Shown here piece by piece: positions 38,297-59,383 of a DNA stretch of 64,000 nt. The notes beneath the pieces were generated by a model that saw only the letters and a list, made by a program, of their open reading frames with translations, was not told where the DNA came from and ran no database searches. Within the stretch, counting starts at the first letter, position 1. Each line of letters starts with the position of its first letter. The position numbers and the translations under genes were made by a program. Where the stretch lies: positions 186,001 to 250,000 of IMG/VR virus record IMGVR_UViG_3300044644_001125; one strand, 5' to 3'.

Positions 38297-38383
38297 ATGA
38301 AAATGTTTTACACTCTTACTTTTATCGCATTCTTATTTGTTTTCGCTTTTATGCTTGCTGATTTTCTTACGGACTTCGAATGA
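38297..38383 (+). CDS. 28-aa hydrophobic peptide
   Basis: AGGAG SD; MKMFYTLTFIAFLFVFAFMLADFLTDFE; ATGA-coupled to the next gene. Confidence 0.55.
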   Translation: MKMFYTLTFIAFLFVFAFMLADFLTDFE

Positions 38384-38673
38384 ACATCGAAATAGCACCT
38401 ATTGAATTCCAAAAAGAGTTGAGCTGGGAAGATGCCAGGTTGTACTGCTTTTCGTTTACTATTGATGGGAAAATTGGATGGCGTTTACCTACCAATAAGG
38501 AACAAGAGTTTCTAAAATCACAAAACATTGAAAGTTCCGATGAATGGTATTGGACTTCTAACGACGATGGCGACTGGGTAGTATGCTACAACTGGCATTC
38601 CGAACTGGGATCTCATAGCTTTAAAGAACACATTCGTTACGCTAGACCAGTGAGAGATCTAAAAGATAATTGA
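38380..38673 (+). CDS. DUF1566/Lcl-like paralog 1
   Basis: EIAP..SW..A..YC...IDGKIGWRLPT..WYWTS..RPVR. Confidence 0.8.
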   Translation: MNIEIAPIEFQKELSWEDARLYCFSFTIDGKIGWRLPTNKEQEFLKSQNIESSDEWYWTSNDDGDWVVCYNWHSELGSHSFKEHIRYARPVRDLKDN

Positions 38674-38717
38674 ATCAACGCGAGCACCGCTAGGTGCGAG
38701 CTATCAAGGAAAACAGT

Positions 38718-39056
38718 ATGAACATCGAAATAGCACCAGAAAAGTATTGGACTCGCCTATCCTACGATGAAGCAGTATTCTATTGCTTCACGCTAGGTTA
38801 TCGTTTACCAACCGAAAAAGAATTCCTTGAACTCTCAGTTGCTGAATTTAGATTTGAAGGGCCTTATTGGTCTAGTGAACCTCCTCGTCTTGAGTTCAGA
38901 TATGTTTATATTAACTTACAAAAAGGCAGAGGTGGTTGCACCAGTTCACGTGTTAGTAGTAAATGTTTGGTTTTGCCAATTAGAACTAAACAACCTATTC
39001 TCAAAACGCCAAATCTTTTCAAACGGATTATTAACAGACTATGTACATCGAAATAG
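38718..39056 (+). CDS. DUF1566/Lcl-like paralog 2 (divergent)
   Basis: EIAP, YC..LGYRLPT, YWSS, VLPIR. Confidence 0.75.
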   Translation: MNIEIAPEKYWTRLSYDEAVFYCFTLGYRLPTEKEFLELSVAEFRFEGPYWSSEPPRLEFRYVYINLQKGRGGCTSSRVSSKCLVLPIRTKQPILKTPNLFKRIINRLCTSK

Positions 39057-39394
39057 CACCACCCGAATATCAGGTTAAAATGCCACAAAATACAGCAAAG
39101 ATGTATTGTTTCTCCCTTAACATTGACGGTAAGGTAGGCTGGCGTGAACCAACCACAGATGAATTGCATAAGATTTCGAAATCTATAGATTATGATGAAT
39201 GGATTTCTAACCGTGGTTTTTGGAGTTCCGATGGTTATACTATCTTACGTGATTGTTGGTCATTTCCTTGGTCACTTATCAATGACTACGAACTTAATAC
39301 TCCACGTTTGGTAGTCCCAGTTAGAACCCTACCAGAAGTCGGTTGGTTTGGTAGGTTGATCTACAAATGGAACGGATATAGAGAAATCCTATGA
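39041..39394 (+). CDS. DUF1566/Lcl-like paralog 3 (divergent)
   Basis: YCFSLNIDGKVGWREPT, FWSS, VPVR. Confidence 0.75.
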   Translation: MYIEIAPPEYQVKMPQNTAKMYCFSLNIDGKVGWREPTTDELHKISKSIDYDEWISNRGFWSSDGYTILRDCWSFPWSLINDYELNTPRLVVPVRTLPEVGWFGRLIYKWNGYREIL

Positions 39395-39726
39395 ACTTTG
39401 AAACAGCACCGAAGTCAGCAGTAATTGAAGCAAACTACGATGATGCCAGATTCTACTGTATGGCAAACATTGAGGGTAAAACAGGTTGGAGATTACCAAC
39501 TATGGATGAATTGAATCAAATATACCTTGATAATCGATTACAGGTGCAAAAGTTTGAACCAGTTTGTTACTGGTCATGCACTCCGTATAATGTACTCGAT
39601 AACCCAGTTTTTGACAAAGCCGTTTGGACTCAAGATTTCAGAAAAGGATTCCAAACGTATTGCATACCAGGCAAAAACAATATACCATACAATAGGTATT
39701 TTGTATTACCTGTTCGTGATCTCTAA
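39391..39726 (+). CDS. DUF1566/Lcl-like paralog 4
   Basis: GKTGWRLPTMDEL, YWS, VW.QDF..G, VLPVR. Confidence 0.8.
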   Translation: MNFETAPKSAVIEANYDDARFYCMANIEGKTGWRLPTMDELNQIYLDNRLQVQKFEPVCYWSCTPYNVLDNPVFDKAVWTQDFRKGFQTYCIPGKNNIPYNRYFVLPVRDL

Positions 39727-39752
39727 AAGATAATTAAACCAAGGAATCTAAC

Positions 39753-40040
39753 ATGAAAAGCATTGACGTATACAAACCAACCCACGATGATTGGTACCCT
39801 TCATACCAAGTAGAAGGTTGGGATAACCTACAACTTGTTTGTGTTTCCTTTATTCAGACTGGTCCAGATCCAGCAAGGGGGAATGGCCAATGGCGTGTTT
39901 GCGTTTGGGGTGCAGATGATTGCGGTATGGAAAGAGACTACGACGATCGCAGTGAAGCTATGACTATGTTCTATCGCGTTATCAGTTGGGAGTTTGTAGA
40001 CCTTAAGTTGCTACGTGAACATGGGTTTGTTAGTGCATGA
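39753..40040 (+). CDS. hypothetical protein
   Basis: AGGA SD; unrelated to its neighbours. Confidence 0.65.
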   Translation: MKSIDVYKPTHDDWYPSYQVEGWDNLQLVCVSFIQTGPDPARGNGQWRVCVWGADDCGMERDYDDRSEAMTMFYRVISWEFVDLKLLREHGFVSA

Positions 40041-40330
40041 AATATGAAATCGCGCCTAAATCCACTGAAACCTATTTAAATTGGGGTGATGCCCGTTTGT
40101 ATTGTTTTGCTCTTAATATCGATGGAAAAACCGGTTGGCGATTGCCTACTATCAATGAACTTATCGAAATCTATTATTCGCAACATGATTTAAGAATGGA
40201 TAATTACTGGTCATCTACAGTTGCATGTGACGATACCTACGCAGAAATGTTTGCATTTCACAGGCATATCGAACGTAGAGGTTCAAAATCATGGGGTCAA
40301 TACGTTAGAGCAGTTAGGTCTATTGCTTGA
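40037..40330 (+). CDS. DUF1566/Lcl-like paralog 5
   Basis: GWRLPT..EL, YWSST, YVRAVR. Confidence 0.85.
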   Translation: MKYEIAPKSTETYLNWGDARLYCFALNIDGKTGWRLPTINELIEIYYSQHDLRMDNYWSSTVACDDTYAEMFAFHRHIERRGSKSWGQYVRAVRSIA

Positions 40331-40431
40331 GGTTTATTGCTGGTTTTGGGTTATTATTGTGTGTTGCGAGCACCGCTAGGTGCGAGCTTGTTATAATGAA
40401 AAGGGCCCACATGCGTGAGCCCCATTATCTT

Positions 40432-41703: not shown

Positions 41704-42138
41704 TCAAGAATCTAATTGTTTACATGTCCATCCCTTGTGACTTTTCCTAACTCCCCGTGATACCTTTCCCATAGTAGACGGATCTAAGCCATTTTCTTTA
41801 CAAAACAGTTCAAGATTACGTATTGTGAATGTGTTGCCTTCAGAATTAGTTAATTCCCAAGTTTTGGTATTAGCCTCGTTTGCAGCTGCCATTGATAAAT
41901 TACCATTTGCAATCCGCGATGCCAATGATTTCTGCGCATTTTCTTTGGTTATCCCACGTTCTCTACAAGTTATCGCAGCTTTATCAGCAGCTATCTGAAA
42001 TGTTCCGTTATTAGTTTTAGTAACTTTTGCTTTTGCCGCACCGGTCACATACGAGTTATTAGCCAATCTAGTTTCACGGATCTTTTGTCCAACTGTTTTA
42101 GTTTCTGCTGTGGTTTCTGTATCTTCAGTCATGTTCAC
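41704..42138 (-). CDS. endonuclease-associated repeat-domain protein without nuclease domain
   Basis: One copy of the same W.L...G..F..NL..FC..NGL module. Confidence 0.65.
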   Translation of the reverse strand: MNMTEDTETTAETKTVGQKIRETRLANNSYVTGAAKAKVTKTNNGTFQIAADKAAITCRERGITKENAQKSLASRIANGNLSMAAANEANTKTWELTNSEGNTFTIRNLELFCKENGLDPSTMGKVSRGVRKSHKGWTCKQLDS

Positions 42139-42236
42139 CTCTGATTAATATTCAAAAAGAATTCATATTATACTATATATTCGCGAGGCACGCTAGTGCC
42201 GAGCCATTGAAAAAGGGCCCGAAGGCCCTTTCTTGG

Positions 42237-44021: not shown

Positions 44022-44288
44022 ATGAAATACTATCAACATACTGTTTACATACGCGAAGATTCCACTGGGTTAACTGCGCATCGTAACGCAGGCGATTCAG
44101 AATGGGGTGAAATAGAAAGCTGTTCTGAAAAACTAGATGTGGTTTGGGTTTGTTGTAATGAGTTTGGTAAGGAAATACATAAAATATACGACAATCGTAT
44201 AGATGCTGAGTCTTATGCCTGTTCTTGCAATCGCTTTAGAGGCGATGATTCTGAAAACGTAATTGTAGAATGTTTGGAAATCCTATGA
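44022..44288 (+). CDS. hypothetical protein
   Basis: AGGA SD, ATG 44022. Confidence 0.65.
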   Translation: MKYYQHTVYIREDSTGLTAHRNAGDSEWGEIESCSEKLDVVWVCCNEFGKEIHKIYDNRIDAESYACSCNRFRGDDSENVIVECLEIL

Positions 44289-44578
44289 ACTTTGAAATAG
44301 CACCAAAAGAAACCGAGATCCAAGCCAACTGGGATGATGCCCGATTGTATTGTTTTGCTCTTAATATTGATGGTAAGACTGGATGGAGATTACCAACCAA
44401 AGACGAATTGAATGAAATATATCAATCAAAAAATGATTTTGAGGAGGAATGGTATTGGTCCTCTACTGAGTGCAATGACGATAACGCCTGGGGTCAGTGT
44501 TTCTACGGCGGAGCCCATTCCGACGGCGATAAGAACTACGGCGACATCTACGTTAGAGCAGTTAGAGATATAACATGA
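44285..44578 (+). CDS. DUF1566/Lcl paralog 6 with DGR-type variable region
   Basis: WSSTE-CNDDN-AW-GQC-F-YG-G...K...YVRAVR; NNC/NNT codons. Confidence 0.88.
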   Translation: MNFEIAPKETEIQANWDDARLYCFALNIDGKTGWRLPTKDELNEIYQSKNDFEEEWYWSSTECNDDNAWGQCFYGGAHSDGDKNYGDIYVRAVRDIT

Positions 44579-44865
44579 AATTCGAAATAGCACCAAAATC
44601 GACTGAAATCCGAACCAACTGGGATAATGCAAGATTGTATAGTTTCTTTCTTACAATCGATGGAAAATCAGGATGGAGGTTACCTACTAAAAACGAATTT
44701 AGTGAAATTTGGAAATCCGATAACGATTTCGATGGTTGGTATTGGTCTTCGACCGAAATTGATACCACACGCGCCTGGGTAAAAAGTTTCTTGTCAAACA
44801 GTTTTCACAAGGCAAATAAACTTGATGATAAGATTATAACTAGGTTAGTTCGGGATTTACTATGA
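44575..44865 (+). CDS. DUF1566/Lcl paralog 7
   Basis: GWRLPT, YWSSTE, AW..SF. Confidence 0.85.
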   Translation: MKFEIAPKSTEIRTNWDNARLYSFFLTIDGKSGWRLPTKNEFSEIWKSDNDFDGWYWSSTEIDTTRAWVKSFLSNSFHKANKLDDKIITRLVRDLL

Positions 44866-45158
44866 AATTCGAAATAGCACCAAAAGAAACCGAGATACTA
44901 GCCAACTGGGATGATGCCAGATTGTATTGTTTTGCTCTTCGTATAGATGGTAAAACAGGATGGCGGTTGCCAACCAAGAAAGAGTTGAATATAATGGTTG
45001 ATTTTCTCAATGGTAATGATTATTATTGGACTAGCGAAGAATGGGGTGATGTAAGCATTTGGGTTCAAAAAGGCTTCGCGTATCGAGGAATTCACCACCA
45101 GTTTCATGCCCATCGTGAAAGTAAAAATAAGGTTAGAGCCGTGAGATCTAAAAGATAA
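44862..45158 (+). CDS. DUF1566/Lcl paralog 8
   Basis: GWRLPT, YWTS, VRAVR. Confidence 0.82.
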   Translation: MKFEIAPKETEILANWDDARLYCFALRIDGKTGWRLPTKKELNIMVDFLNGNDYYWTSEEWGDVSIWVQKGFAYRGIHHQFHAHRESKNKVRAVRSKR

Positions 45159-45379
45159 TGAAATCAAAAATTGAAATAGCACCTACATCAGAAAATTGGT
45201 TATCATACGATGAGGCATTGCTATATTGCTTTGCCTTGAACATCGATGGTAAGATTGGATGGAGAATGCCAACTGACAAAGAATTTCAATACCATTATAA
45301 CATACGAGGATGGTACTTAAATGAGCAATGTCCAGAACCATTACCCGTAACACCAGTGCGAGATCTAAAAGATGATTGA
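45158..45379 (+). CDS. DUF1566/Lcl paralog 9 (internally shortened)
   Basis: YCFALNIDGKIGWRMPT, TPVRDLKD. Confidence 0.75.
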   Translation: MKSKIEIAPTSENWLSYDEALLYCFALNIDGKIGWRMPTDKEFQYHYNIRGWYLNEQCPEPLPVTPVRDLKDD

Positions 45380-45602
45380 AATAGCACCTGAAGTATATTG
45401 GAAAAAGTTAAACTATTACGAGGCAATCATGTACTGCTTTAGTCTGAATATTGATGGTAAAATAGGTTGGAGATTACCTAATAGTGTTGAATACGAACTT
45501 ACTGAAAAAACTGGATGGGTAGTTGAAGACTTGCACACTTTTCCCAATACTTTTAAGTTACGTGTTCAGTTTTTAACAACCCCAGTGCGAGATATAACAT
45601 GA
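45372..45602 (+). CDS. DUF1566/Lcl paralog 10 (shortened)
   Basis: YCFSLNIDGKIGWRLP, TPVRDI. Confidence 0.75.
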   Translation: MIEIAPEVYWKKLNYYEAIMYCFSLNIDGKIGWRLPNSVEYELTEKTGWVVEDLHTFPNTFKLRVQFLTTPVRDIT

Positions 45603-45862
45603 ACTTTGAGTTTGCAAACGAGAAATATTGGAAAGATTTGACATTCGATGAAGCTAAGATGTATTGCTTCTCTCTTACGATTAATGGTAAGACTGGTTGG
45701 AGATTACCGACTAGTGCAGAACATGCCTTAATTGGTGTGACTCTGTGGGAACAATTTAATCAACTGAGAAGTTCATGCTATCTTTTTTGGGATAGTGAGA
45801 GTGAAAGTAATACCACTGAAGTTTCGAATACCATACCAGTGCGAGATATAATCGATGATTGA
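45599..45862 (+). CDS. DUF1566/Lcl paralog 11
   Basis: YCFSL.INGKTGWRLPT, IPVRDI. Confidence 0.75.
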   Translation: MNFEFANEKYWKDLTFDEAKMYCFSLTINGKTGWRLPTSAEHALIGVTLWEQFNQLRSSCYLFWDSESESNTTEVSNTIPVRDIIDD

Positions 45863-46106
45863 AGTAGGAAAACCACCAGAAAACCGAATGTCGTATGTAG
45901 ATGCTGTGTTGTATTGTTTTTGTTTAGGTGATGGTTGGAGACTGCCAACCCTTGACGAATACAAAGCCATTGAACATGTTATGTGGTACCAAAATGATGA
46001 TTTACAAGATAGTCCCTGTGAATTTCACGTAATACCAGTTAGAGATATTGAACCTACTATGATTAATAGAATACTTTGTCTGATTCACCCAAGGTTTAAA
46101 AGATGA
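45855..46106 (+). CDS. DUF1566/Lcl paralog 12 (shortened)
   Basis: YCFCLGDGWRLPT, IPVRDI. Confidence 0.72.
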   Translation: MIEVGKPPENRMSYVDAVLYCFCLGDGWRLPTLDEYKAIEHVMWYQNDDLQDSPCEFHVIPVRDIEPTMINRILCLIHPRFKR

Positions 46107-46396
46107 TTGAAATAGCACCTAAAGAATATTGGAAAACTGACTTGAATTGGTACGAAGCCAAGATGTATTGTTTTTGTCTTGATATAGATGGTAAAACCGG
46201 TTGGCATTTGCCTGATATGAATTATTTCCACACAAACAAAGTCACACGAGCTGTCAATGATTGGTACTGGACTTCCGAGGACCTTGGATCGGATGCAATG
46301 CAAGTGCGTCCATACGGAATGCACTTTATCGAATGGGACAAGAATGATGCTGGACCTGCTGTTACTATGCCGGTAAGAGATCTAAAAGATAATTGA
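46103..46396 (+). CDS. DUF1566/Lcl paralog 13
   Basis: YCFCLDIDGKTGWHLP, WYWTS, MPVRDLKD. Confidence 0.78.
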   Translation: MIEIAPKEYWKTDLNWYEAKMYCFCLDIDGKTGWHLPDMNYFHTNKVTRAVNDWYWTSEDLGSDAMQVRPYGMHFIEWDKNDAGPAVTMPVRDLKDN

Positions 46397-46405
46397 AAAT
46401 AAAGG

Positions 46406-46517
46406 TTGACATTACTGCTCAATAGAGTTACAATTAACTATATTATGAAATTACCCAAAAGAAGTTAACGAGAAACCTTGAAAAAAGGTTGACAGTCCCC
46501 ATAATCTAAGTTATACT
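46406..46517 (+). promoter_or_regulatory. two tandem sigma70 promoters facing a non-coding region
   Basis: TTGACA-17-TACAAT (46406-46434) and TTGACA-17-TATACT (46489-46517). Confidence 0.75.
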
Positions 46518-46649
46518 TAATCATATTCTACTCAAAAGCAGTTTACCGAGACCATCTCAAATCCATACCGACACCAAGTCTATTACTCAATTATCTTTTA
46601 GAGACCATCTCAATACTAATTCAATTATCTTTTAGGCACCCGCCAAACT

Positions 46650-47092
46650 TGCTCGTCGAATTACTAGATAGAACATAGAAAGACGAGAGAATTGCTAAGA
46701 AAGCCGCGCACAGGCGACCATTACGTGCCCTTAAACCCTAGTCTACTTGTCACATAGGGGATGGAAGTTCCGAATTTAGCAACGGAGATGTAACTCACTA
46801 CCCCACCAGATGAGTTATGGGATATGCCTTCATACAACCCATTTGAGTTACAGCAAAAAGATATAACAAAGGCTAAAGATGGGTTGAGAAAACCCGCGTT
46901 TGTTGGATGAGGTAGCAGTTGTTCAGCAAGCCACCGTCAGATTAATAAGACTGAGCTCGAGGTACCGGCTGACCGCCTCTGTAATGCTCTACTGCTGCTG
47001 TGATGCGATACTTGTACGCAGAACCTTTCATAGTTGTTCCATGAAAGTGCTTTGAATTAACCCGAGTTTTTCGGGTTAAGATGTTCCGCTCC
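46650..47092 (+). ncRNA. candidate large structured non-coding RNA
   Basis: ORF-free, GC-richer; stems CCCTA/TAGGG, TCCG/CGGA, GTAACTCA/TGAGTTAC, GGGTT/AACCC, GTAGCAGT/ACTGCTGC, TCAG/CTGA, GAGG/CCTC, TGCG/CGCA, CTTTCAT/ATGAAAG, TTAACCCGA/TCGGGTTAA. Confidence 0.6.
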
Positions 47093-47159
47093 ACATACCG
47101 CAGTATTAAAAGCCTCTATTATTAAAGCTATTAATGATTCTATTATAAATCTATTATTG

Positions 47160-47540
47160 TAGGAGCACCTAAAAGATAATAGATTCTACTTTATCTTCCC
47201 TTATATCCTACCTGCTTAAGCCACGCGCACATACATTTTGAACCTAAAAGATAATTGCCTTATAGCTGTTTCCATTCGCGCACATACATTTTAGATGCAT
47301 TCGAACCCATACATTTTAGCTTTTTACCAGATGCACACATACATTATAAACTCCATACGAACACATACATTTTAAACTAAAAGATAATTCAATTAATAAC
47401 TCAACTATAAGATCATTAATACAAAACATCATAACTAAAAGATAATAGATCAAATATAAACATCATCTATAAGACAATCATCTTTTAGTAATAGACATCA
47501 TCTATAAGTCTATAATAGTTTAATCATCTTTTAGTATTAT
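47160..47540. repeat. AT-rich iteron-like repeat region (candidate origin)
   Basis: 5x CATACATT, 4x CTAAAAGATAAT then 2x inverted ATCATCTTTTAG, 2x ACATCATCTATAAG. Confidence 0.65.
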
Positions 47541-47686
47541 TCTTTTAAATGGACAGTTACGTCCAAAATCTGGTGGGTTCAATTATCTATTTCATTTCTA
47601 TATGTGCGAGCGCGAATAGCGCGAGCTATCAGAGATACATTCAACAACCAATCCAAAATCGCCTAAATACGACAATAGGAGAATTT

Positions 47687-48220
47687 ATGGCAACAGACAT
47701 TAAAGACGTAATACAGAATATTGAACAGATTTATGGTTCTAATAACAGTCTCGCTTTGCTAAAAGATTTCGAACGGGTTATAGATGAATTAGACACATAT
47801 GTCTATGATAACTGGATTGATGGTGAATTAGTTGTTGGACCAAATGAAAGTCGTTACTTTGTTGAATGTACTTTTATGTGGCCTAAAAAGCAAATGCCAG
47901 AACCCATTGGTGGATTAAGACTAATGGAGTATGGGTGTAAAGTTGAGTTTGCTAGTTCCCATTTTTCAAGAGTTCGAAAGATTAAGAAAGTTGATGACAT
48001 CAGACCAGGCACGCGTAAAGGTAAGATTGACCGCGAAGAAGTTTGGCTAGTTAAAATTGGCATGCCAAAGAAACTCATGACTGATATCACACGTGGTTAT
48101 ACTAATTTGGATAAAAACAAGTTAGATGATATTGCTACGATGAATCGTGGAGTGAATGCGCATGTTGACCCAGCTGAAACACAAGCAATGGAGGCTGAGA
48201 ATGAACTTCCACCACTCTAA
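47687..48220 (+). CDS. conserved phage hypothetical protein
   Basis: Late promoter, AGGAG SD, ATG 47687. Confidence 0.75.
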   Translation: MATDIKDVIQNIEQIYGSNNSLALLKDFERVIDELDTYVYDNWIDGELVVGPNESRYFVECTFMWPKKQMPEPIGGLRLMEYGCKVEFASSHFSRVRKIKKVDDIRPGTRKGKIDREEVWLVKIGMPKKLMTDITRGYTNLDKNKLDDIATMNRGVNAHVDPAETQAMEAENELPPL

Positions 48221-48938
48221 CTTAACCGAAGGGTTAAGACCTTTAGATTTAGAACATATGATTTACCCATTCTTTGAGATTGATACGTATCGGTCTAAGA
48301 TGGGTGAAGATCAAGATGTTTGTGTTTTGAGTTTCCAACTTAAAGATAGATCACCTGCCAAAGACTTAATGGATTTCATTGAAAAAGGATACCATTATGT
48401 GTTGGATGCTGATGTAAGTGCTGGTGAATCGAATGCAGGTGATTACTATGTATTCGTTGAATTACCAAGAGAATCTCATTTAGCCAATCATATCACTGAA
48501 ATCTTATATGGCGTTACTAAGTTGACTGGTATTAAAGACTTTAAGTTCAAGTTTCATACCAATGAAGCTGAACACGAAGCCAATGAAGAAACTTTAACTG
48601 CTATAGTTCCGTCTAGCCCAGCTGACTACGTTGCTATGTTAGGTGATATCAGAACTGAAGGCATTCGTAAATTCTTTACAAAGACTTTAATGGATGATTT
48701 TACCTTAGAAGACGATGTTATCACTATTGTAAAACCTTATGGTAATCGAATCAAACTTCGATTGGTACAAGAGAATGCCATTTTAGAAGGTACTGAAGGT
48801 TATGCAATGGATGAAGCCACTATGAGTGAAATCTTTTGGTTAACTAAAGTACTAGGTGATTATAACATCAACAAAATAGGTGAGAACTTTGTGTTTACTA
48901 ACGATTCAAACACAATGCTATTGAAAAGGATTGACTAA
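48201..48938 (+). CDS. hypothetical protein (LTE-G leader)
   Basis: GAGG SD, ATG 48201. Confidence 0.72.
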   Translation: MNFHHSNLTEGLRPLDLEHMIYPFFEIDTYRSKMGEDQDVCVLSFQLKDRSPAKDLMDFIEKGYHYVLDADVSAGESNAGDYYVFVELPRESHLANHITEILYGVTKLTGIKDFKFKFHTNEAEHEANEETLTAIVPSSPADYVAMLGDIRTEGIRKFFTKTLMDDFTLEDDVITIVKPYGNRIKLRLVQENAILEGTEGYAMDEATMSEIFWLTKVLGDYNINKIGENFVFTNDSNTMLLKRID

Positions 48939-49554
48939 TATGTATGAAATAACAAAAGCTGACTTGGCGGCTATATTACCAAATAACAAACACATTGATG
49001 AATGGAAAGCGGCATTAGATAAGATTTTACCAAAGTATGAAATCAATACCAAGTTACGAGTTGCTGCATTTATTGCTCAATGTTCACATGAAAGTGGTCA
49101 GTTTACTGTCTTACGTGAAAACTTGAACTATCGTGCTGAAACCTTAGTTAAAGTATTCCCCAAGTACTTTCCTACATTAGCAGTAGCCAATCAATATGCA
49201 AAGCAACCAGAAAAGATTGCAAATAAAGTATATGGTGGTAGAATGGGTAATGGTCCAGAAGCTACTGGTGAAGGTTTTAAGTTTTGTGGTCGTGGTTTAA
49301 TCCAATTGACTGGTAAAGCAAATTACCTTAGCATGGCTAAAGACTTAGGTGTAGAAGTAGATCATTTATGTGAATACTTGTGTAGCATGGAAGGTGCTTT
49401 AGAATCTGCTTGCTGGTTCTGGGATAAACATGACCTTAATACCTATGCAGACAAGAAAGACATGCTAACCATTACTAAGAAAATCAATGGTGGCACTAAT
49501 GGTTTAAAAGAACGCAATGCGAATTATGCATTGGCCCTTAAACATTTACCTTAA
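48931..49554 (+). CDS. glycoside hydrolase family 19 (chitinase-like endolysin)
   Basis: AAFIAQCSHESG, ENLNY, GRGLIQLTGK.NY, TKKINGG.NGL. Confidence 0.92.
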   Translation: MTNMYEITKADLAAILPNNKHIDEWKAALDKILPKYEINTKLRVAAFIAQCSHESGQFTVLRENLNYRAETLVKVFPKYFPTLAVANQYAKQPEKIANKVYGGRMGNGPEATGEGFKFCGRGLIQLTGKANYLSMAKDLGVEVDHLCEYLCSMEGALESACWFWDKHDLNTYADKKDMLTITKKINGGTNGLKERNANYALALKHLP

Positions 49555-49563
49555 TTTGGGAAT

Positions 49564-50361
49564 ATGGATTACTACAAGATTTTAGGTTTATCGCGTGGCG
49601 CATCGGCTGATGAAATAAAGAAAGCCTATCGCTCACTGGCAATGAAACATCACCCAGACCGAGGTGGTTCTGAAGAACAATTTAAAGACATTGCAACGGC
49701 TTATGAAGTCTTAAGTGACCCAGTTAAAAAACAACGGGTTGATAATGGACAAGATCCAAATGGACCTGAACCGCAATTCAATGGTGGATTTAATCCATTT
49801 GAATTTTTCCATGGCGGTGGTCCTCATGGGTTTCATCACGTACAACGTAATACCAGTCTTTCTATCCATGTAGAAGTTTCACTTGAAGAAGTACTAACTG
49901 GTAAATCATTTGATGCTGACTTGGCTTACCCATCTGGTCAGAAGAAAACGATTAAACTTGAAGTTCCTGCTGGTGTGTTACATGGTCAGCAGATTCGATA
50001 TCAAGGTCTGGGTGATGATTCGATTGCTGGTATTCCTCCTGGTGATTTGATTGTTAATATTAACATTAGACCTCATCGAATGTTTAGACGTGAAGGTGAT
50101 GCGCTAGTAGTTGAAAAAACCATATCAGTTTGGGATGCTCTTTTAGGTACTAAACTTGAAATTCATACCCTAGATGACAGAACGCTAAACCTGACAATCC
50201 CAGCTGGTATCCAACCAGAAACTGTTTTAAGTTGTAATGGTGAGGGATTGCCTAATATGCAAACTAAACGTCGTGGTAATCTTTTGATTAAAGTTAAAAT
50301 CAAGATACCCAAAGACTTAACACCAGATCAAATACTGCACATACAAGCAGTTGCTACTTAA
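49564..50361 (+). CDS. dnaJ: DnaJ-class molecular chaperone without zinc finger
   Basis: DYY.ILG, HHPDRGG, F..I..AYEVLSD; DnaJ_C GDL.V.I...H..F.R.G. Confidence 0.92.
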   Translation: MDYYKILGLSRGASADEIKKAYRSLAMKHHPDRGGSEEQFKDIATAYEVLSDPVKKQRVDNGQDPNGPEPQFNGGFNPFEFFHGGGPHGFHHVQRNTSLSIHVEVSLEEVLTGKSFDADLAYPSGQKKTIKLEVPAGVLHGQQIRYQGLGDDSIAGIPPGDLIVNINIRPHRMFRREGDALVVEKTISVWDALLGTKLEIHTLDDRTLNLTIPAGIQPETVLSCNGEGLPNMQTKRRGNLLIKVKIKIPKDLTPDQILHIQAVAT

Positions 50362-50431
50362 ATTCAATACCCAGCTATAGTCTGGGTATTCTTTTATTAG
50401 GCTCGCACCTAACGGTGCTCGCAAATAATGG

Positions 50432-50459
50432 TTGACATCGGTTATCTTTTAGTTATAAT
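50432..50459 (+). promoter_or_regulatory. sigma70-type early promoter, Lcl cluster 3
   Basis: TTGACA-TCGGTTATCTTTTAGT-TATAAT. Confidence 0.85.
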
Positions 50460-50484
50460 ACGCAAAACTTAACCGGAGGCAATC

Positions 50485-50685
50485 ATGAGAAAATCCCTAT
50501 CACATAAAGAAATCTTAATGCTAAAACTCGATAATCTTTTAGCGACTGCTGAATCACTCGAGGACAAACTCGTAACCGAGAATAATCAATGGCAATATCG
50601 TGCAACCGTCCTACGTAGCGATATTCAAAATTTGATTGACTATGTAGAATGGTCGGTTGAAGAGGCTGAACATCATGAACTTTGA
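50485..50685 (+). CDS. small coiled-coil hypothetical protein
   Basis: GGAGG SD. Confidence 0.6.
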   Translation: MRKSLSHKEILMLKLDNLLATAESLEDKLVTENNQWQYRATVLRSDIQNLIDYVEWSVEEAEHHEL

Positions 50686-50968
50686 AATAGCACCTAAATC
50701 AACTGAGATACAAGCCAATTGGGATAATGCCAAGTTGTATTGCTTTTCTCTCAATATCAATGGAAAAACTGGATGGAGATTACCTACCAAAGACGAACTA
50801 GATGAAATATACCAATCCGAAAATGATTTTAGGAATACATTTTACTGGTCATCTACTGTGGGTAATGGCAACGGCGCCTTGGCTCAGAGTTTCCGCACTG
50901 GCAAACAGTATGACGCCAGTAAGGACAGCGGCGGCGGCCACGTTAGAGCCATTAGGGATTTAACATGA
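50675..50968 (+). CDS. DUF1566/Lcl paralog 14 with DGR-type VR
   Basis: NNC/NNT-patterned 3' end. Confidence 0.88.
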   Translation: MNFEIAPKSTEIQANWDNAKLYCFSLNINGKTGWRLPTKDELDEIYQSENDFRNTFYWSSTVGNGNGALAQSFRTGKQYDASKDSGGGHVRAIRDLT

Positions 50969-51261
50969 AATACGAAATAGCACCTAAATCAACTGAAACA
51001 AGATTAACATGGGAAGAAGCTAGAATGTATTGCTTTTCTCTTAATATCGATGGTAAGATCGGATGGAGATTACCCACTAAAGAAGAACTCAACGAGATTT
51101 ATGAATCAGTAAACGATTTCGAGAAGGCTTGGTACTGGTCCTCTACTGAGAACAATGGCAACACCGCCTGGAGTCAGGGTTTCAACGGTGGCTACCGGAG
51201 CAACGGCGGCAATAAGGTCAACGGCCTTAACTACGTTAGAGCCATCAGATCAATCCCTTAA
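50965..51261 (+). CDS. DUF1566/Lcl paralog 15 with DGR-type VR
   Basis: gag aac aat ggc aac acc gcc tgg agt cag ggt ttc aac ggt ggc...aat aag gtc aac...tac gtt aga gcc. Confidence 0.9.
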   Translation: MKYEIAPKSTETRLTWEEARMYCFSLNIDGKIGWRLPTKEELNEIYESVNDFEKAWYWSSTENNGNTAWSQGFNGGYRSNGGNKVNGLNYVRAIRSIP

Positions 51262-51349
51262 CCTTTAGTATTTTTTGCGAGGCATAAAGCCTAAAAGATG
51301 ATTAATAATAATGCGAGCACCGTTAGGTGCGATTCAATAGGAAAACCAA

Positions 51350-51640
51350 ATGAACTTTGAAATAGCACCTAAATCAACTGAGATAAAAGCAAATTGGGAT
51401 GATGCCAGATTATATTGCTTTGCTCTTAATATAGATGGTAAGACTGGATGGAGATTACCAAATAAAGAAGAATTGAATGAAATCTATGAATCCGAAAATG
51501 ATTTTAGGAATACATTTTACTGGTCATCTACCGAGAACGATGACAGCAACGCATGGATGCAGTCCTTCAACAGTGGTGGTCAGACCTTCAACCTCAAGAG
51601 CATCGACATACTCTACGTTAGAGCAGTGAGAGATATATGA
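51350..51640 (+). CDS. DUF1566/Lcl paralog 16 with DGR-type VR
   Basis: NNC/NNT-patterned 3' end. Confidence 0.9.
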   Translation: MNFEIAPKSTEIKANWDDARLYCFALNIDGKTGWRLPNKEELNEIYESENDFRNTFYWSSTENDDSNAWMQSFNSGGQTFNLKSIDILYVRAVRDI

Positions 51641-51930
51641 ACTTTGAAATAGCACCTAAATCAACTGAGATCCAAGCCAATTGGTATGATGCCAGATTAT
51701 ATTGCTTTGCTCTTAATATAGATGGTAAGACTGGATGGAGATTACCTACCTTAGAAGAATTAAATGAAATTTATGAATCAGAAAATGATTTTGAAAAATG
51801 GGGATATTGGTCTTCTACTGAGAGCAGTGGCGACTACGCCTGGAAGCAGAATTTCAACGGTGGCAACCAGTACACCGGTAATAAGAACTACGGCGGCTAC
51901 TACGTTAGAGCCATCAGATCAATCCCTTAA
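51637..51930 (+). CDS. DUF1566/Lcl paralog 17 with DGR-type VR
   Basis: cag aat ttc aac ggt ggc aac cag tac acc ggt aat aag aac tac. Confidence 0.9.
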   Translation: MNFEIAPKSTEIQANWYDARLYCFALNIDGKTGWRLPTLEELNEIYESENDFEKWGYWSSTESSGDYAWKQNFNGGNQYTGNKNYGGYYVRAIRSIP

Positions 51931-52019
51931 CCTTTGGTATTTTTTTGCGAGGCATAAAGCCTAAAAGATGATTAATAATAATGCGAGCACCGCTAGGTGC
52001 GATCCAATAGGAAAACCAA

Positions 52020-52313
52020 ATGAACTTTGAAATAGCACCTAAATCAACTGAAATTAGACTAAACTGGTTTGATGCCAAGTTGTATTGCTTTGCTCTTAAC
52101 ATAGATGGTAAGACTGGATGGAGATTGCCAGATGAAGAAGAACTCAACGAGATTTATGAATCAGAAAACGATTTCGTTGGTAACTACTACTGGTCCTCTA
52201 CTGAGATCAATAGCTACCTTGTCTGGAGTCAGAGTTTCAGTAATGGCGATCAGGGCAACAGCTCTAAGTACTACGGCTCTGTCTATGTTAGAGCCATCAG
52301 ATCAATCCCTTAA
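52020..52313 (+). CDS. DUF1566/Lcl paralog 18 with DGR-type VR
   Basis: NNC/NNT-patterned 3' end. Confidence 0.9.
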   Translation: MNFEIAPKSTEIRLNWFDAKLYCFALNIDGKTGWRLPDEEELNEIYESENDFVGNYYWSSTEINSYLVWSQSFSNGDQGNSSKYYGSVYVRAIRSIP

Positions 52314-52400
52314 CCTTTTGGCTTTTTGCGAGGCATAAAGCCTAAAAGATGATTAATAACATTGCGAGCACCGCTAGGTGCGAGCCAATAGGAAAACCAA

Positions 52401-52712
52401 ATGAAATTTGAAATAGCACCCAAATCAACAGAGATTCGAGCCAATTGGTATGATGCCAGATTATATTGCTTTGCTCTTAACATAGATGGTAAGACTGGAT
52501 GGAGATTACCAAATAAAGAAGAATTGGATGAAATATACCAATCCGAAAATGATTCCGAAAATGATTTCGAAATTGGTTGGGATTGGTATTGGTCCTCAAC
52601 TGAGTACAATGATGACTTAGTCGTCTGGATTCAGTATTTCTATAATGGGCTTCAGAATAACGGTAAAAAGAACAGCCGCAGCGGATACGTTAGAGCCATC
52701 CGAGATATCTAA
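52401..52712 (+). CDS. DUF1566/Lcl paralog 19 with DGR-type VR
   Basis: Patterned 3' end; duplicated SENDSEND upstream. Confidence 0.88.
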   Translation: MKFEIAPKSTEIRANWYDARLYCFALNIDGKTGWRLPNKEELDEIYQSENDSENDFEIGWDWYWSSTEYNDDLVVWIQYFYNGLQNNGKKNSRSGYVRAIRDI

Positions 52713-52734
52713 ATTTTAATTAAATGGTAGACAA

Positions 52735-53415
52735 ATGAATATTAATCAAGAAATTGCAAGAGTAAAATATCGCCTTAGTAAATTAGAACAACAGCGAGAT
52801 GAATTCCGGAGTATGTTTTTACCAAACAATCGTGATAACAAGGTTGATTGTAATTATAACAAAAACCGTGTTGATAAATGGAGACTGCCTAATGTCTCTA
52901 ACTACGAAGTTAAAGAATGGTTAATTAACCTTGCATACGGTGTGCGTTCAAAATTCGTGACCGCTGATGAATTAATGCATAAATTGCACTCATTGCCTAC
53001 CGAGGTGCATGAGCGTATAATGTGGCACGCAAGTACTGATGGTGGGCAATGTTTCGAAGATCTGTTTAGTGGTGATAGTTCACCTGTTACTGAATCCGCT
53101 GCAAGTGAATCGAATTTTGAAATAGCCCCAAAATCAACCGAAGTTAAAACTAATTGGTACTATGCCAAACTGTATTGTATTGCTCTTAATATCGATGGAA
53201 AGACTGGTTGGCGTATGCCATCTAAAGAAGAACTAAATCAGATATACGAATCTGAAAATGATTTTGAGAAGGATTGGTATTGGTCATCCACTGAGGCTAT
53301 TGGTGAACAAGGTCATGGTGATTATGCTTGGTATCAGCATTTTGGTCCATATCCGGTACCGGACTTCTACAAGAAGTCTTACAAAAGATACATTAGAGCT
53401 ATCAGATCAATATAG
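52735..53415 (+). CDS. DUF1566/Lcl paralog 20 fused to a ~125-aa unrelated N-terminal domain
   Basis: Lcl domain starts at NFEIAPKSTE. Confidence 0.82.
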   Translation: MNINQEIARVKYRLSKLEQQRDEFRSMFLPNNRDNKVDCNYNKNRVDKWRLPNVSNYEVKEWLINLAYGVRSKFVTADELMHKLHSLPTEVHERIMWHASTDGGQCFEDLFSGDSSPVTESAASESNFEIAPKSTEVKTNWYYAKLYCIALNIDGKTGWRMPSKEELNQIYESENDFEKDWYWSSTEAIGEQGHGDYAWYQHFGPYPVPDFYKKSYKRYIRAIRSI

Positions 53416-53443
53416 TTCTCGCGAACCAAACAGGAGACAAAAA

Positions 53444-53740
53444 ATGAACTTTGAAATAGCACCTAAATCGACTGAGATACAAACCAACTGGGAAGAAGCT
53501 AGAATGTATTGCTTTTCTCTTAATATCGATGGTAAGATCGGATGGAGATTGCCAACTAAAGAAGAACTAAACGACATTTATGAATCAGAAAATGATTTTG
53601 AAGAATGGTACTACTGGTCCTCTACTGAGTCCAATGGCTCAAAAGCATGGTTTCAGAATTTCAACGTTGGCCACCAGAGCAGTCACGGCGTTAAGAACAA
53701 CGGCAACATCTACGGTAGAGCCATTAGAGATTTACTATGA
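53444..53740 (+). CDS. DUF1566/Lcl paralog 21 with DGR-type VR
   Basis: AGGAG SD, ATG 53444; patterned 3' end. Confidence 0.9.
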   Translation: MNFEIAPKSTEIQTNWEEARMYCFSLNIDGKIGWRLPTKEELNDIYESENDFEEWYYWSSTESNGSKAWFQNFNVGHQSSHGVKNNGNIYGRAIRDLL

Positions 53741-54042
53741 ACTTTGAAATAGCACCTAAATCAACTGAGATCCAATCCAATTGGGATGATGCCAAGTTGT
53801 ATTGTTTTTCCCTTAATATCGATGGTAAGACTGGATGGAGATTACCTACCAAACAAGAACTGAATGAGATATACCAATCAGAAAATGATTTTGAAAACAA
53901 TTGGTATTGGTCCTCGACCGAGTACTCCTCGACTGAGTACGATGGCATCTTCGTCTGGTATCAGAATATGTCAAACGGAGTTCAGTACAACCGTACTAAG
54001 AACGGCAGCTACTACGTTAGAGCCATTAGATCAATCACTTAA
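53737..54042 (+). CDS. DUF1566/Lcl paralog 22 with DGR-type VR
   Basis: 15-nt tandem duplication (SSTEY x2) at the VR start. Confidence 0.9.
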   Translation: MNFEIAPKSTEIQSNWDDAKLYCFSLNIDGKTGWRLPTKQELNEIYQSENDFENNWYWSSTEYSSTEYDGIFVWYQNMSNGVQYNRTKNGSYYVRAIRSIT

Positions 54043-54056
54043 CCTTTTGGATTATC

Positions 54057-54350
54057 ATGAACTTTGAAATAGCACCAAAATCAACTGAGATAAAAGCAAA
54101 TTGGGATGATGCCAGATTATATTGCTTTGCTCTTAACATAGATGGTAAGACAGGGTGGCGTATGCCATCTAAAGAAGAACTCAACGAGATTTATGAATCA
54201 GTAAACGATTTCGAGAAGGCTTGGTACTGGTCCTCTACTGAGAATAATGGCAACTACGCCTGGGATCAGTTTATGTCGAATGGCTACCAGGCCAGCGGCA
54301 ATAAGAACTACGGCACCTTCTACGTTAGAGCAGTTAGATCAATCCCTTAA
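54057..54350 (+). CDS. DUF1566/Lcl paralog 23 with DGR-type VR
   Basis: Patterned 3' end followed by a hairpin at 54365. Confidence 0.9.
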   Translation: MNFEIAPKSTEIKANWDDARLYCFALNIDGKTGWRMPSKEELNEIYESVNDFEKAWYWSSTENNGNYAWDQFMSNGYQASGNKNYGTFYVRAVRSIP

Positions 54351-54529
54351 CCTTTAGTATTTTTGCGAGCTCCGCTAGGAGCGAGCCAATAAACAATTAA
54401 CCCTTGACTTATCGAATATTCCCTGTATACTACAACTTCGCTACATACTGTAATACAGAAAAACAAACCTTGACTTGTACTAGAAAACAAGTTAAACTAA
54501 CTATAACATTAATAACCTAGGAGTTACGA

Positions 54530-57236: not shown

Positions 57237-57272
57237 AGTTTTATCCTCTTTTGGTTAATTTGTAATATCGTG

Positions 57273-57300
57273 TTGACAAGTAAGATACATATGTTATAAT
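57273..57300 (+). promoter_or_regulatory. sigma70 promoter (extended -10) for the clpA C-half
   Basis: TTGACA-16-TATAAT with TGn. Confidence 0.75.
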
Positions 57301-57339
57301 GAGTCTTCATTCTATTTATTAACCATCAGGAGAGCTACA

Positions 57340-59249: not shown

Positions 59250-59383
59250 CTTTATGGCTCGTGCCTATCGGCACTCGCTATCCAATATTAGAGTTAAACT
59301 TGTATATATCAATATATACGCATAATATGCGAGCTCCGCTAGGAGCGAGCCTAGAAATACCGAACTTTCAAGCTAAATACGGT

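What the first reader, a model, noticed from the sequence alone, without database searches (positions are those of the whole stretch)
44455..54345. Orphan DGR targets: template and reverse transcriptase absent from the window; template can be reconstructed
Seen: I found no RT ORF, no Avd-like ORF and no AAC-run template on either strand in these 64 kb. The column consensus of the ten VRs gives an inferred TR: TCC TCT ACT GAG AAC AAT AAC AAC AAC GCC TGG AAT CAG AAT TTC AAC AAT GGC AAC CAG AAC AAC AAC AAT AAG AAC AAC AAC AAC AAC TAC GTT AGA GC. The invariant 3' TACGTTAGAGC(C/A)(A/G)T is IMH-like. Two VRs (53737, 54057) read ATG TCN instead of TTC AAC, and two (50965, 53444) have one extra codon before AAG, hinting at more than one template or template slippage. 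Inference: retrohoming acts in trans from a distant phage locus or, more excitingly, from a host or co-infecting DGR that the phage exploits.
Basis: inference. Interest (0 to 1): 0.85.

Follow-up and report, generated by a model that had tools for sequence, protein, structure and literature searches.

The report
Jumbo-phage DGR targets, template elsewhere
A giant freshwater phage carries dozens of tiny lectin-fold genes, at least fifteen of them ending in segments written by a mutagenic reverse-transcriptase system; I found that system's template on other phage contigs but not on this one, and most of the segments are now frozen.

Summary
Ten C-terminal segments at 44453-54332 are genuine DGR variable regions (VRs) in ~97-aa Lcl_C/DUF1566 C-type-lectin-fold proteins. 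The window holds no template (TR), reverse transcriptase (RT) or Avd.

A real TR sits in a canonical bAvd-TR-RT cassette on freshwater metagenome contigs, including a 272-kb jumbo-phage contig. Against it, the window VRs mismatch at 39% of adenine sites and 11% of other sites (p~1e-26).

The window is positions 186,001-250,000 of a 327-kb phage contig. In the 99 kb examined there are 49 Lcl_C paralogs and at least 15 VRs, in clusters more than 100 kb apart.

TR patterns, RT peptide patterns and an exact-Avd look-up all failed to find the cassette on that contig.

Most VRs are static between strains and between lakes. A few are near-pristine, and these match three different TR alleles.

The prokaryote genome scan found no matching template, so a host-DGR origin has no support. 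Trans action or recombinational import remains open. This is a new variant of a known kind.

The parts
44270..44578 (+). Lcl_C paralog g44270. TR-homologous VR at 44453-44560. RD-type 3' end that abuts the next gene.
   Evidence: 7/64 non-A and 21/44 A-site mismatches to TR1. VR identical to the orthologue in L011 although the scaffold differs at 8/174 positions.
50657..50968 (+). Lcl_C paralog g50657 (probable start 50675). VR at 50843-50950.
   Evidence: 6/64 non-A and 22/44 A-site mismatches to TR1.
50965..51261 (+). Lcl_C paralog g50965. VR at 51133-51243 with an extra codon before AAG. Near-pristine.
   Evidence: 2/65 non-A mismatches and no gaps against TR5, the allele with the extra AAC. 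The 3' flank is homologous to the cassette target's flank.
51350..51640 (+). Lcl_C paralog g51350. VR at 51518-51625, decayed.
   Evidence: 12/64 non-A mismatches to TR1.
51637..51930 (+). Lcl_C paralog g51637. VR at 51805-51912. This is the protein that was modelled.
   Evidence: Pfam Lcl_C E 8e-15. AlphaFold pLDDT 96, best PDB match Legionella Lcl C-terminal domain 8q4e with TM 0.79. 4/64 non-A mismatches to TR1.
52020..52313 (+). Lcl_C paralog g52020. VR at 52188-52295.
   Evidence: 7/64 non-A mismatches. Against L006, the VR differs at 4/81 positions and the scaffold at 29/174. Identical in contigs from samples X1 and X3; one difference in X2.
52401..52712 (+). Lcl_C paralog g52401. VR at 52587-52697, decayed.
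   Evidence: 13/64 non-A mismatches plus a 3-nt indel. Unchanged in the X1 and X2 contigs.
52735..53415 (+). Longer paralog g52735 (226 aa) with an N-terminal extension. Relic VR at 53278-53406 with no remaining adenine bias.
   Evidence: E 8e-08; 26/64 non-A versus 22/44 A-site mismatches. Pfam Lcl_C.
53444..53740 (+). Lcl_C paralog g53258 (ORF listed from 53258, probable start 53444). VR at 53612-53722 with an extra codon.
   Evidence: 6/65 non-A mismatches to TR5. Against L006, the VR differs at 1/84 positions and the scaffold at 10/174.
53737..54042 (+). Lcl_C paralog g53737. VR at 53905-54024, ATG-TCA type, with an internal 15-nt duplication.
   Evidence: Best allele TR4, 7/63 non-A mismatches. 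Against L006, the VR differs at 1/93 positions and the scaffold at 9/174. 0-2 differences in samples X1-X3.
54057..54350 (+). Lcl_C paralog g54057, last gene of the array. VR at 54225-54332, ATG-TCG type, near-pristine. This locus differs between strains and samples.
   Evidence: 1/64 non-A mismatches to TR3. The gene at the same position in L006 has 0/64 to TR4 but differs from the window copy at 22/81 VR positions (12, 9, 1 by codon position). 18 differences in the X3 contig.
38380..40330 (+). Upstream cluster of diverged Lcl_C paralogs without a recognisable DGR signature. It includes g40037 (40037-40330), which keeps TACGTTAGAGC.
   Evidence: g40037 has 27/63 non-A versus 24/44 A-site mismatches.
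44575..46396 (+). Tandem array of diverged or short Lcl_C paralogs with no VR or only relic VRs.
51262..51349 (+). One of the ~89-nt spacers that follow RSIP*-type VR genes (others at 51931-52019, 52314-52400, and from 54351). They are homologous to the cassette target's 3' flank (AGATCAAYC...TTTTTTGC), lack its strong GC hairpin, and end in the general phage hairpin GCGA-N5-GCTA-N5'-GAGC.

Best explanation
The ten segments are true DGR variable regions. Each forms the C-terminal part of a ~97-aa single-domain C-type-lectin-fold (Lcl_C/DUF1566) protein. These proteins belong to a family that is greatly expanded in an uncultured freshwater jumbo myophage: 49 members in the 99 kb examined of a 327-kb contig, at least 15 of them with VRs, in clusters at about 109, 230-240 and 325 kb.

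Shown: their cognate template is a 108-111-nt TR in a canonical target-bAvd-TR-RT cassette. The cassette occurs in many freshwater metagenomes and lies on a 272-kb phage contig next to tail-fibre genes. It has at least five TR alleles. It is active on its own adjacent targets, which have no non-adenine mismatches and differ between contigs.

Inferred: the window VRs were written by adenine-mutagenic retrohoming from at least three of these alleles, then spread and shuffled by tandem duplication and recombination within the arrays.

Shown: most are now frozen. They are more conserved than their own scaffolds between strains, stable across lakes, and have accumulated 6-20% non-adenine changes. 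Many have lost the cassette-like 3' flank. A minority (g54057, g50965, and L007a at the contig end) are near-pristine. At two loci the positional counterparts in other strains match a different TR allele or carry different adenine-site content, so rewriting or replacement has continued at low frequency.

The cassette is not in the window. By three independent probes it is not on the 327-kb contig either. I infer that it is carried by only part of this phage population, or by a related jumbo phage. Fresh VRs would then reach cassette-less genomes by recombination or by trans-homing during co-infection. The net effect is a standing, largely hard-wired library of binding-site variants rather than one continually rewritten receptor.
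For: Lcl_C domain and fold. Adenine-specific divergence from a real TR: pooled 171/438 A sites versus 71/639 non-A sites, p 1e-26; per-allele scores. Template found, with cassette anatomy. RVT_1 scores above its Pfam cut-off. Avd-like ORF has E 1e-08 to 2e-08. Cassette active on adjacent targets, 0 non-A mismatches in 7 VRs. Cassette contig is phage-like, with tail-fibre hits and 39.9% GC. Source contig and coordinates. Family census. No TR, RT or Avd in the window. No TR in any viral-collection contig. No close RT on the source contig or the 372-kb relatives. Identical Avd indexed on a different large contig, not the source, which is itself indexed. VR stasis: VR differences 0/81, 4/81, 1/84, 1/93 against scaffold differences 8/174, 29/174, 10/174, 9/174; VRs identical or nearly so in independent lake samples. 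Three alleles represented by near-pristine VRs in one genome, and different alleles at the same locus in different strains. 3'-flank homology and its degradation, with a weak association between an intact flank and VR freshness (p~0.04).
Against: Only 99 of 327 kb of the source contig was read directly. Absence of the cassette elsewhere rests on exact-pattern and exact-protein searches, which a diverged TR, RT or Avd would escape. The contig ends inside a unique gene and relatives reach 372 kb, so about 45 kb may be unassembled. Assemblies break at this cassette everywhere, which is where it would be lost. The run data were assembled contigs, which hide rare variants, so low-level ongoing diversification within a sample cannot be excluded. 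Co-occurrence of cassette and window across runs is only partial and uninformative. No gene outside the Lcl_C family links the cassette contig to this phage lineage. Avd scores fall below the curated family cut-offs. The function of the proteins is unknown.
Confidence: 0.8

Rival explanations
1. An ordinary resident multi-target DGR. The cassette is part of this same genome but lies in a stretch missing from the 327-kb contig, because assemblers break at VR/TR repeats. It acts in cis-genome on remote targets, as in Treponema or Legionella.
For: Cassette contigs are nearly always short or start at the cassette. The 272-kb contig begins with it. The source contig ends within a gene and is 45 kb shorter than the 372-kb relatives. 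Near-pristine VRs exist in the source genome. A VR array sits about 700 bp from the contig end.
Against: Near-pristine VRs in the one genome match three different TR alleles, whereas targets next to a resident cassette all match its single allele. Most VRs have not changed between strains. The two ~372-kb relatives also carry a near-pristine VR but no TR by pattern. The cassette's right-hand neighbour gene has no relative in the viral collection. The best window-holding runs are not among the listed cassette holders.
Confidence: 0.35
2. Pure fossils. An ancestor lost the cassette, and all VRs are inherited relics that now evolve only by point mutation, duplication and recombination. No homing has occurred since.
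For: VRs are static and under purifying selection between strains. Non-A decay reaches 20% and there are full relics (g52735, g40037). 3' recognition elements are degraded. No cassette was found on the contig.
Against: g54057, g50965 and L007a have 0-2 non-A mismatches in ~64 sites, while synonymous sites of neighbouring scaffolds differ by 5-17% between strains. At the g54057 and L007a loci, different strains hold different near-pristine VRs that match different alleles. This requires recent writing somewhere in the population, possibly followed by recombinational import.
Confidence: 0.25
3. Trans-genomic homing. A co-infecting cassette-bearing jumbo phage supplies RT, Avd and TR RNA, and these rewrite competent VRs in this cassette-less genome.
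For: avd, TR and brt have been shown to work in trans from a plasmid (reported in PMC5758913). Several TR alleles are represented among near-pristine VRs of one genome. VR nucleotides match the TR although the scaffold proteins are only 35-45% identical to the cassette's own targets. Six sequencing runs hold both elements.
Against: There is no direct evidence of co-infection or of a shared host. Recombination between strains explains the same pattern. The fresh VRs have a deleted codon at the IMH junction and lack the cassette target's strong GC hairpin.
Confidence: 0.15
4. A host-encoded DGR is exploited by the phage.
For: None found. Chromosomal DGRs with DUF1566-type targets do exist (PMC5758913).
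Against: The genome-collection scan for the family-specific template gave only a chance hit. The matching cassette is on a phage-like contig beside tail-fibre genes.
Confidence: 0.03
5. Not DGR-related. The N/G/S/Y-rich loops arose by ordinary diversifying selection on paralogs.
For: The paralogs do diverge by ordinary substitution in their scaffolds.
Against: Position-3 conservation with hypervariable positions 1-2. Adenine-specific mismatch to an independently discovered template, p 1e-26. Allele-specific features (ATG TCA, extra AAC) are reproduced in the VRs.
Confidence: 0.01

Closest known systems
Legionella pneumophila DGR and its target LdtA (CLec2 / DUF1566-type VR class, category 'd' of Wu et al. 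2018, PMC5758913)
   Same: The VR lies in the C-terminal part of a DUF1566/Lcl_C C-type-lectin fold. The template is AAC/AAT-rich. About half of this class are short DUF1566-only proteins. The best structural match is the Legionella Lcl C-terminal domain.
   Different: LdtA is a single surface lipoprotein encoded beside its cassette in a bacterial genomic island. Here there are dozens of leaderless 97-aa paralogs in a lytic-type jumbo phage, with no cassette on the contig.
Treponema denticola DGR (TvpA plus six further remote targets) and other multi-target DGRs, such as Stenotrophomonas with eight tandem targets
   Same: One template serves many targets, some far from the RT.
   Different: Those are cellular, and the cassette and targets share one chromosome and one TR. 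Reported maxima are 7 non-adjacent or 8 tandem targets. Here at least 15 VRs lie on one phage contig, more than 100 kb apart, and match several TR alleles. Wu et al. expected no remote targets (>100 kb) for phage DGRs.
Bordetella phage BPP-1 DGR (mtd-avd-TR-brt)
   Same: The external cassette has the same order (target VR, Avd, TR, RT), adenine-specific mutagenesis, an IMH/IMH* junction and a GC hairpin downstream of the VR.
   Different: BPP-1 has one tail-fibre target adjacent to the cassette in a 42-kb temperate phage. In the window the targets are small free-standing domains, with no cassette nearby, and are mostly inactive.
Widespread phage DGRs sharing the TR core GCC TGG AAY CAG AAY TTC AAC AAY GGC AAC CAG AAC AAC AAC AAC AAG (at least 120 viral contigs)
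   Same: The template core is nearly identical at nucleotide level.
   Different: Those are phages of about 40 kb, many of them GC-rich, with about three pattern matches per contig, read here as one TR plus adjacent VRs. Their RTs are at most 60% identical to this cassette's RT.

Membership tests
DGR variable region (target of mutagenic retrohoming) | Pairs with a template repeat from which it differs essentially only at template adenines | tested here: met
   Ten window VRs pooled: 39% of A sites versus 11% of non-A sites mismatched, p 1e-26. Best cases have 1/64 and 2/65 non-A mismatches. The TR is on other contigs, not in the window. The decayed members (12-13/64 non-A) would fail a strict A-only criterion individually.
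DGR variable region (target of mutagenic retrohoming) | Located in a variation-tolerant scaffold, typically the C-terminal part of a C-type-lectin fold | tested here: met
   Pfam Lcl_C at 55.6 bits against a 34.9 cut-off. Model pLDDT 96. Top PDB match 8q4e with TM 0.79, followed by C-type-lectin-like proteins.
DGR variable region (target of mutagenic retrohoming) | 3' recognition elements: an IMH that differs from the TR's IMH*, and a GC-rich hairpin or cruciform just downstream | tested here: inconclusive
   The cassette's own target has both. RSIP*-type window VRs keep a homologous flank, but one codon at the junction is missing and the strong hairpin is absent. RD-type VRs abut the next gene. 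The hairpin that is present is a general phage element.
DGR variable region (target of mutagenic retrohoming) | Ongoing diversification: VR heterogeneity at adenine-derived sites within or between populations | tested here: not met
   Four orthologous VRs are more conserved than their scaffolds and identical or nearly so in other lakes. The exception is the g54057 locus. Only assembled contigs were available, so rare variants within a sample were not tested.
Complete DGR locus (cassette) | DGR-type reverse transcriptase encoded near the TR | tested here: not met
   None in the window or in 35 kb more of the source contig. Present on external contigs: RVT_1 at 64.6 bits against a 29.6 cut-off, with LPIGNLSSQ and YVDD motifs.
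Complete DGR locus (cassette) | Template repeat in the same locus or genome | tested here: not met
   No TR in the window or in any contig of the viral collection that holds the source contig. A TR diverged at the pattern positions would be missed.
Complete DGR locus (cassette) | Accessory variability determinant (Avd) | tested here: not met
   No homologue in the window or in L334/L336. The external cassette has a 116-aa Avd-like ORF: bAvd E 2e-08 and DivGenRetAVD E 1e-08, both below the curated cut-offs.
Lcl_C / DUF1566 domain family (PF07603) | Profile match above the gathering threshold, and the fold of the solved Lcl C-terminal domain | tested here: met
   49 family ORFs in 99 kb of the source contig by a family profile.

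The most novel reading that the evidence does not exclude
A DGR cassette acts as a shared mutator across genomes. Cassette-less jumbo phages keep arrays of competent VR-bearing lectin genes. These are rewritten in trans, during co-infection, by whichever cassette-bearing relative is present. That would explain near-pristine VRs from three TR alleles in one genome that has no detectable RT, TR or Avd.
Probability: 0.15. Interest if true: 0.85.

Novelty: new variant of a known kind. Interest (0 to 1): 0.62.

Why it matters
DGRs are usually described as one cassette that continually rewrites one or a few adjacent receptor genes. A survey of 224 jumbo phages found no FGS-type C-type-lectin domains, the kind that reverse transcriptases diversify in other phages (PMC7824862). 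The reference DGR survey expected no remote targets in phages and reported at most 7-8 targets per element (PMC5758913).

Here a 327-kb phage contig holds at least 15 DGR-written VRs among at least 49 single-domain lectin paralogs. They are spread over more than 200 kb, mostly fixed, and derive from several template alleles, with the cassette itself off the contig. This suggests another way DGR output can be used: variants are produced, then archived by duplication as a standing repertoire.

It also makes a concrete question testable: can a DGR act across co-infecting genomes? In practice, it shows that a template can be inferred from orphan VRs accurately enough to retrieve the real cassette from metagenomes.

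Tried and rejected
- Megablast and tblastn against GenBank phages found no relative carrying the family. The large ORF at 29366-32974 gives only weak jumbo-phage hits.
They said nothing about the source contig, although they did reveal the widely shared TR core.
- Family-specific TR patterns in the viral collection gave 0 hits.
- The genome-collection hit and one metagenome hit were chance matches in marine sequences.
- Walking the genome with the look-up of encoding contigs failed at first because of start-codon choice and because only short Logan contigs were returned.
- The cassette's neighbours did not link to the source contig: the 905-aa transferase has no relative in the viral collection, the 2OG oxygenase is on only two contigs, and the left-hand 127-aa gene is only on short contigs.
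- Protein comparison of the cassette flanks with the window and related loci found nothing beyond Lcl_C domains and an intein-like similarity.
- Co-occurrence across runs was inconclusive.
- The RT-profile hits at E 0.006-1 are out-of-frame VR translations matching TR-encoded overhangs in my profile, not RTs.
- The first hairpin pattern was mis-specified and was corrected.
- The association between 3'-flank type and VR freshness is weak and not independent, so it is reported only as a trend.
- I considered and rejected the idea that the hairpin after the VRs is a DGR cruciform, because it recurs genome-wide.

Full report
**1. What is in the window**

The span 44270-54350 holds tandem + strand genes of about 97 codons. 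They share the scaffold EIAP..DARLYCFALNIDGKTGWRLPT..EL..IY...YWSSTE...YVRA(I/V)R. The family extends to 38380-40330 and 44575-46396 with more diverged or shorter members. They are Lcl_C/DUF1566 domains (PF07603, E 8e-15, above the gathering score). A model of g51637 is confident (pLDDT 96). Its best solved match is the Legionella Lcl C-terminal domain (8q4e, TM 0.79), followed by C-type-lectin-like proteins.

The motif TACGTTAGAGC occurs 12 times against 0.74 expected. A VR profile finds ten strong copies, one degenerate copy (g52735) and a few relics, and nothing else on either strand. In the codon alignment the VR columns vary at positions 1-2 and keep C or T at position 3, the reverse of the scaffold.

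**2. Absence of cassette parts from the window**

- No long ORF has an RT-like YxDD context.
- A profile built from 60 genuine DGR RTs recovers 108/108 controls. In the window it hits only out-of-frame VR translations, at E 0.007 or worse.
- The cassette Avd has no homologue.
- No A-rich template copy exists.
- The flanking ORFs are virion proteins, a GH19-type endolysin, DnaJ and a split ClpB.

**3. Source genome**

Pattern scans identified the source as IMGVR_UViG_3300044644_001125, which is JGI contig Ga0453730_0000006 of 327,256 bp. The window is positions 186,001-250,000. It is an uncultured freshwater phage with a T4-type portal and baseplate. GenBank holds only distant relatives. It is found in many lake metagenomes.

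Two further regions of the contig were read. L334 (312,574-327,256) has seven family members, two with VRs, about 700 bp from the contig end. L336 (107,727-128,095) has 19 members, three with decayed VRs. In total, 49 family ORFs and at least 15 VRs lie in 99 kb, with clusters about 121 and 84 kb from the window's VRs. Related contigs of 372,016 and 372,173 bp carry the family too.

**4. Finding the template**

A TR-style pattern with AAY at the hypervariable codons matched at least 120 unrelated viral contigs once each. Family-specific versions gave no hit in the viral collection.

The metagenome collection did give a hit: two freshwater contigs (L251, L253) with TAC TGG TCC TCT ACT GAG AAC AAT GGC AAC AAC GCC TGG AAT CAG AAT TTC AAC AAT GGC AAC CAG AAC AAC AAC AAT AAG AAC AAC GGC AAC AAC TAC GTT AGA GCC.

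L253 shows the full arrangement: target 3' end with VR, a 116-aa Avd-like ORF, the TR, then an RT with LPIGNLSSQ and YVDD. RVT_1 scores above its Pfam cut-off. The Avd match is significant but below the curated cut-offs. L251's RT has a TGG-to-TGA change.

The identical Avd occurs on 31 collection blocks, always followed by TR, RT and a sulfotransferase. One of these is a 271,688-bp contig on which the cassette sits at the very start. Tail-fibre-like giant ORFs follow about 10 kb downstream, and GC is 39.9%.

**5. The DGR test**

The cassette's own VR mismatches its TR at 20/42 adenines and 0/63 other sites. The ten window VRs pooled mismatch at 171/438 adenine sites and 71/639 other sites (odds ratio 5.1, p 1e-26). 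g52735 and g40037 show no bias.

Five TR alleles exist among the cassette contigs:
- TR1: TTC AAC.
- TR2: ATG AAT.
- TR3 and TR4: ATG TCA.
- TR5: TTC AAC plus an extra AAC.

Against the best allele, non-adenine mismatches are:

| VR | Non-A mismatches | Best allele |
|---|---|---|
| g54057 | 1/64 | TR3 |
| g50965 | 2/65 | TR5 |
| L007a | 1/64 | TR1 |
| g51637 | 4/64 | TR1 |
| g53258 | 6/65 | TR5 |
| g50657 | 6/64 | TR1 |
| g44270, g52020 | 7/64 | TR1 |
| g53737 | 7/63 | TR4 |
| g51350 | 12/64 | TR1 |
| g52401 | 13/64 | TR1 |

. As a control, seven cassette-adjacent VRs have no non-adenine mismatch to their resident allele. A target 8 kb away on the 272-kb contig has 11/63.

**6. Activity**

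Between the window and syntenic contigs L011 and L006:

| Gene | VR differences | Scaffold differences |
|---|---|---|
| g44270 | 0/81 | 8/174 |
| g52020 | 4/81 | 29/174 |
| g53258 | 1/84 | 10/174 |
| g53737 | 1/93 | 9/174 |

The VR changes are mostly at third codon positions. Assembled contigs from independent lake samples carry the g52020, g52401 and g53737 VRs with 0-2 differences. These VRs are therefore not being rewritten on this timescale.

There are exceptions. At the g54057 position the window and L006 hold different VRs (22/81 differences; 12, 9, 1 by codon position). Both are near-pristine, to TR3 and TR4 respectively, and sample X3 differs at 18 positions. At the L007a position the source strain matches TR1 and L008 matches TR3. 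Array content also differs between strains.

**7. Recognition elements**

In the cassette, VR and TR share ...TACGTTAGAGCCACC and then diverge (CGGAGATCAACC versus TAGAGATTATGT). A GCGGCGGC...GCCGCCG hairpin follows the target's stop codon.

Window VRs of the RSIP* type keep a homologous flank (AGATCAAYC..TTA..CTTT.G..TTTTTTGC) but lack one junction codon and the strong hairpin. RD-type VRs run into the next gene. VRs with the homologous flank tend to be fresher, but only weakly so (p about 0.04). The hairpin that does follow them is a general element of this phage, with 11 copies and compensatory stem variants.

**8. Where the cassette is**

Evidence against its being on the 327-kb contig:
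- All five alleles fit the pattern, which found nothing in the viral collection.
- RT peptide patterns found only RTs of 60% identity or less, on other contigs.
- The identical Avd is indexed on only one 0.2-1 Mb contig, which is not the source, although the source is indexed.
- The cassette's 905-aa neighbour has no relative there.
- 35 kb more of the contig has no RT or Avd.

Reasons for caution:
- These are exact-match methods.
- The contig ends inside a gene.
- Relatives are 45 kb longer.
- Assemblies break at this cassette.

Three alleles among the near-pristine VRs of one genome argue against a single active resident template. Recombination between strains and trans-homing in co-infection both fit. 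Trans complementation of avd-TR-brt is reported in PMC5758913. The prokaryote genome scan found no matching template, so a host origin has no support.

**9. Comparison and novelty**

The VR class is the known DUF1566/CLec2 type (PMC5758913). Several features are unusual:
- The number of VRs and paralogs.
- Their dispersal over more than 200 kb of a phage genome.
- The predominance of frozen VRs.
- The multi-allele origin.
- The absence of the cassette from the contig.

A jumbo-phage survey found none of the lectin-fold (FGS) domains that reverse transcriptases diversify in other phages (PMC7824862). Full-text searches found no report of orphan VRs, and the papers retrieved for DGRs with jumbo or huge phages describe none, judging by their titles and abstracts. 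I rate this a new variant of a known kind.

Noticed in passing
window 38168-59350 (11 sites, e.g. 38680-38701, 40366-40387, 42183-42204, 52364-52385, 54365-54386, 59329-59350); also L334:14060: An intergenic hairpin GCGA-N5-GCTA-N5'-GAGC occurs 11 times against 0.06 expected, on both strands, with five compensatory stem variants. It is probably a transcription-related element of the phage.
   Followed up: partly
window 54530-58578: A ClpB-like chaperone is split into two ORFs (Clp_N+AAA at 54530-56107, AAA_2+ClpB_D2-small at 57340-58578). A 383-aa ORF of unknown function lies on the opposite strand between them (56085-57236).
   Followed up: no
window 42237-43793 (-) and L334:6613-9783: The PhoH-like ATPase appears to be interrupted by an intein-like insert (seen only in the translation). 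The T4-type portal on the same contig carries an Intein_splicing domain (precomputed Pfam).
   Followed up: no
window 16471-16541: ARAGORN calls a tRNA-Phe with the unusual anticodon AAA.
   Followed up: no
window 61226-63418 and beyond (L323): At least three tandem genes carry the ART-PolyVal domain (PF18760).
   Followed up: no
window 40432-41595 (-) and 41704-42138 (-): Two ORFs contain repeated ~45-aa modules (W.L..P.G....I.NL..FC..NGL...M). They look like homing-endonuclease DNA-binding repeats. They sit between paralog clusters.
   Followed up: no
window 46400-47549: An ORF-poor, A-rich stretch (55% A near 47360) lies between the second paralog array and the virion-protein genes.
   Followed up: no
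L251:605-607 versus L253: One copy of the cassette RT has a TGG-to-TGA nonsense change. It is a defective cassette or an assembly variant.
   Followed up: partly
loci L014-L246 (viral contigs): At least 120 unrelated phage contigs of about 40 kb, many GC-rich, share a nearly identical TR core (GCC TGG AAY CAG AAY TTC AAC AAY GGC AAC CAG AAC AAC AAC AAC AAG). The template is conserved at nucleotide level across very different DGR phages.
   Followed up: partly
window 50940 (read laying loose end, run X6): Contigs in one lake sample continue upstream of the g50657 VR end with the A-rich sequence GTCTACTCGGGAAAAACAACAACGGCAAAT. It could be a TR-like or variant VR copy.
   Followed up: no
L336 (source contig 107,727-128,095): Besides 19 Lcl_C-family ORFs, this region encodes a caspase-like Peptidase_C14, a Band_7 protein, a glycosyltransferase and a GIY-YIG endonuclease.
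   Followed up: no
L249 (IMGVR_UViG_3300043410_001892, 372,173 bp): Another jumbo phage carries a dozen or more short (~70-85 aa) VR-less members of the same family in tandem. The expansion therefore predates the DGR-type VR subgroup, or is independent of it.
   Followed up: partly
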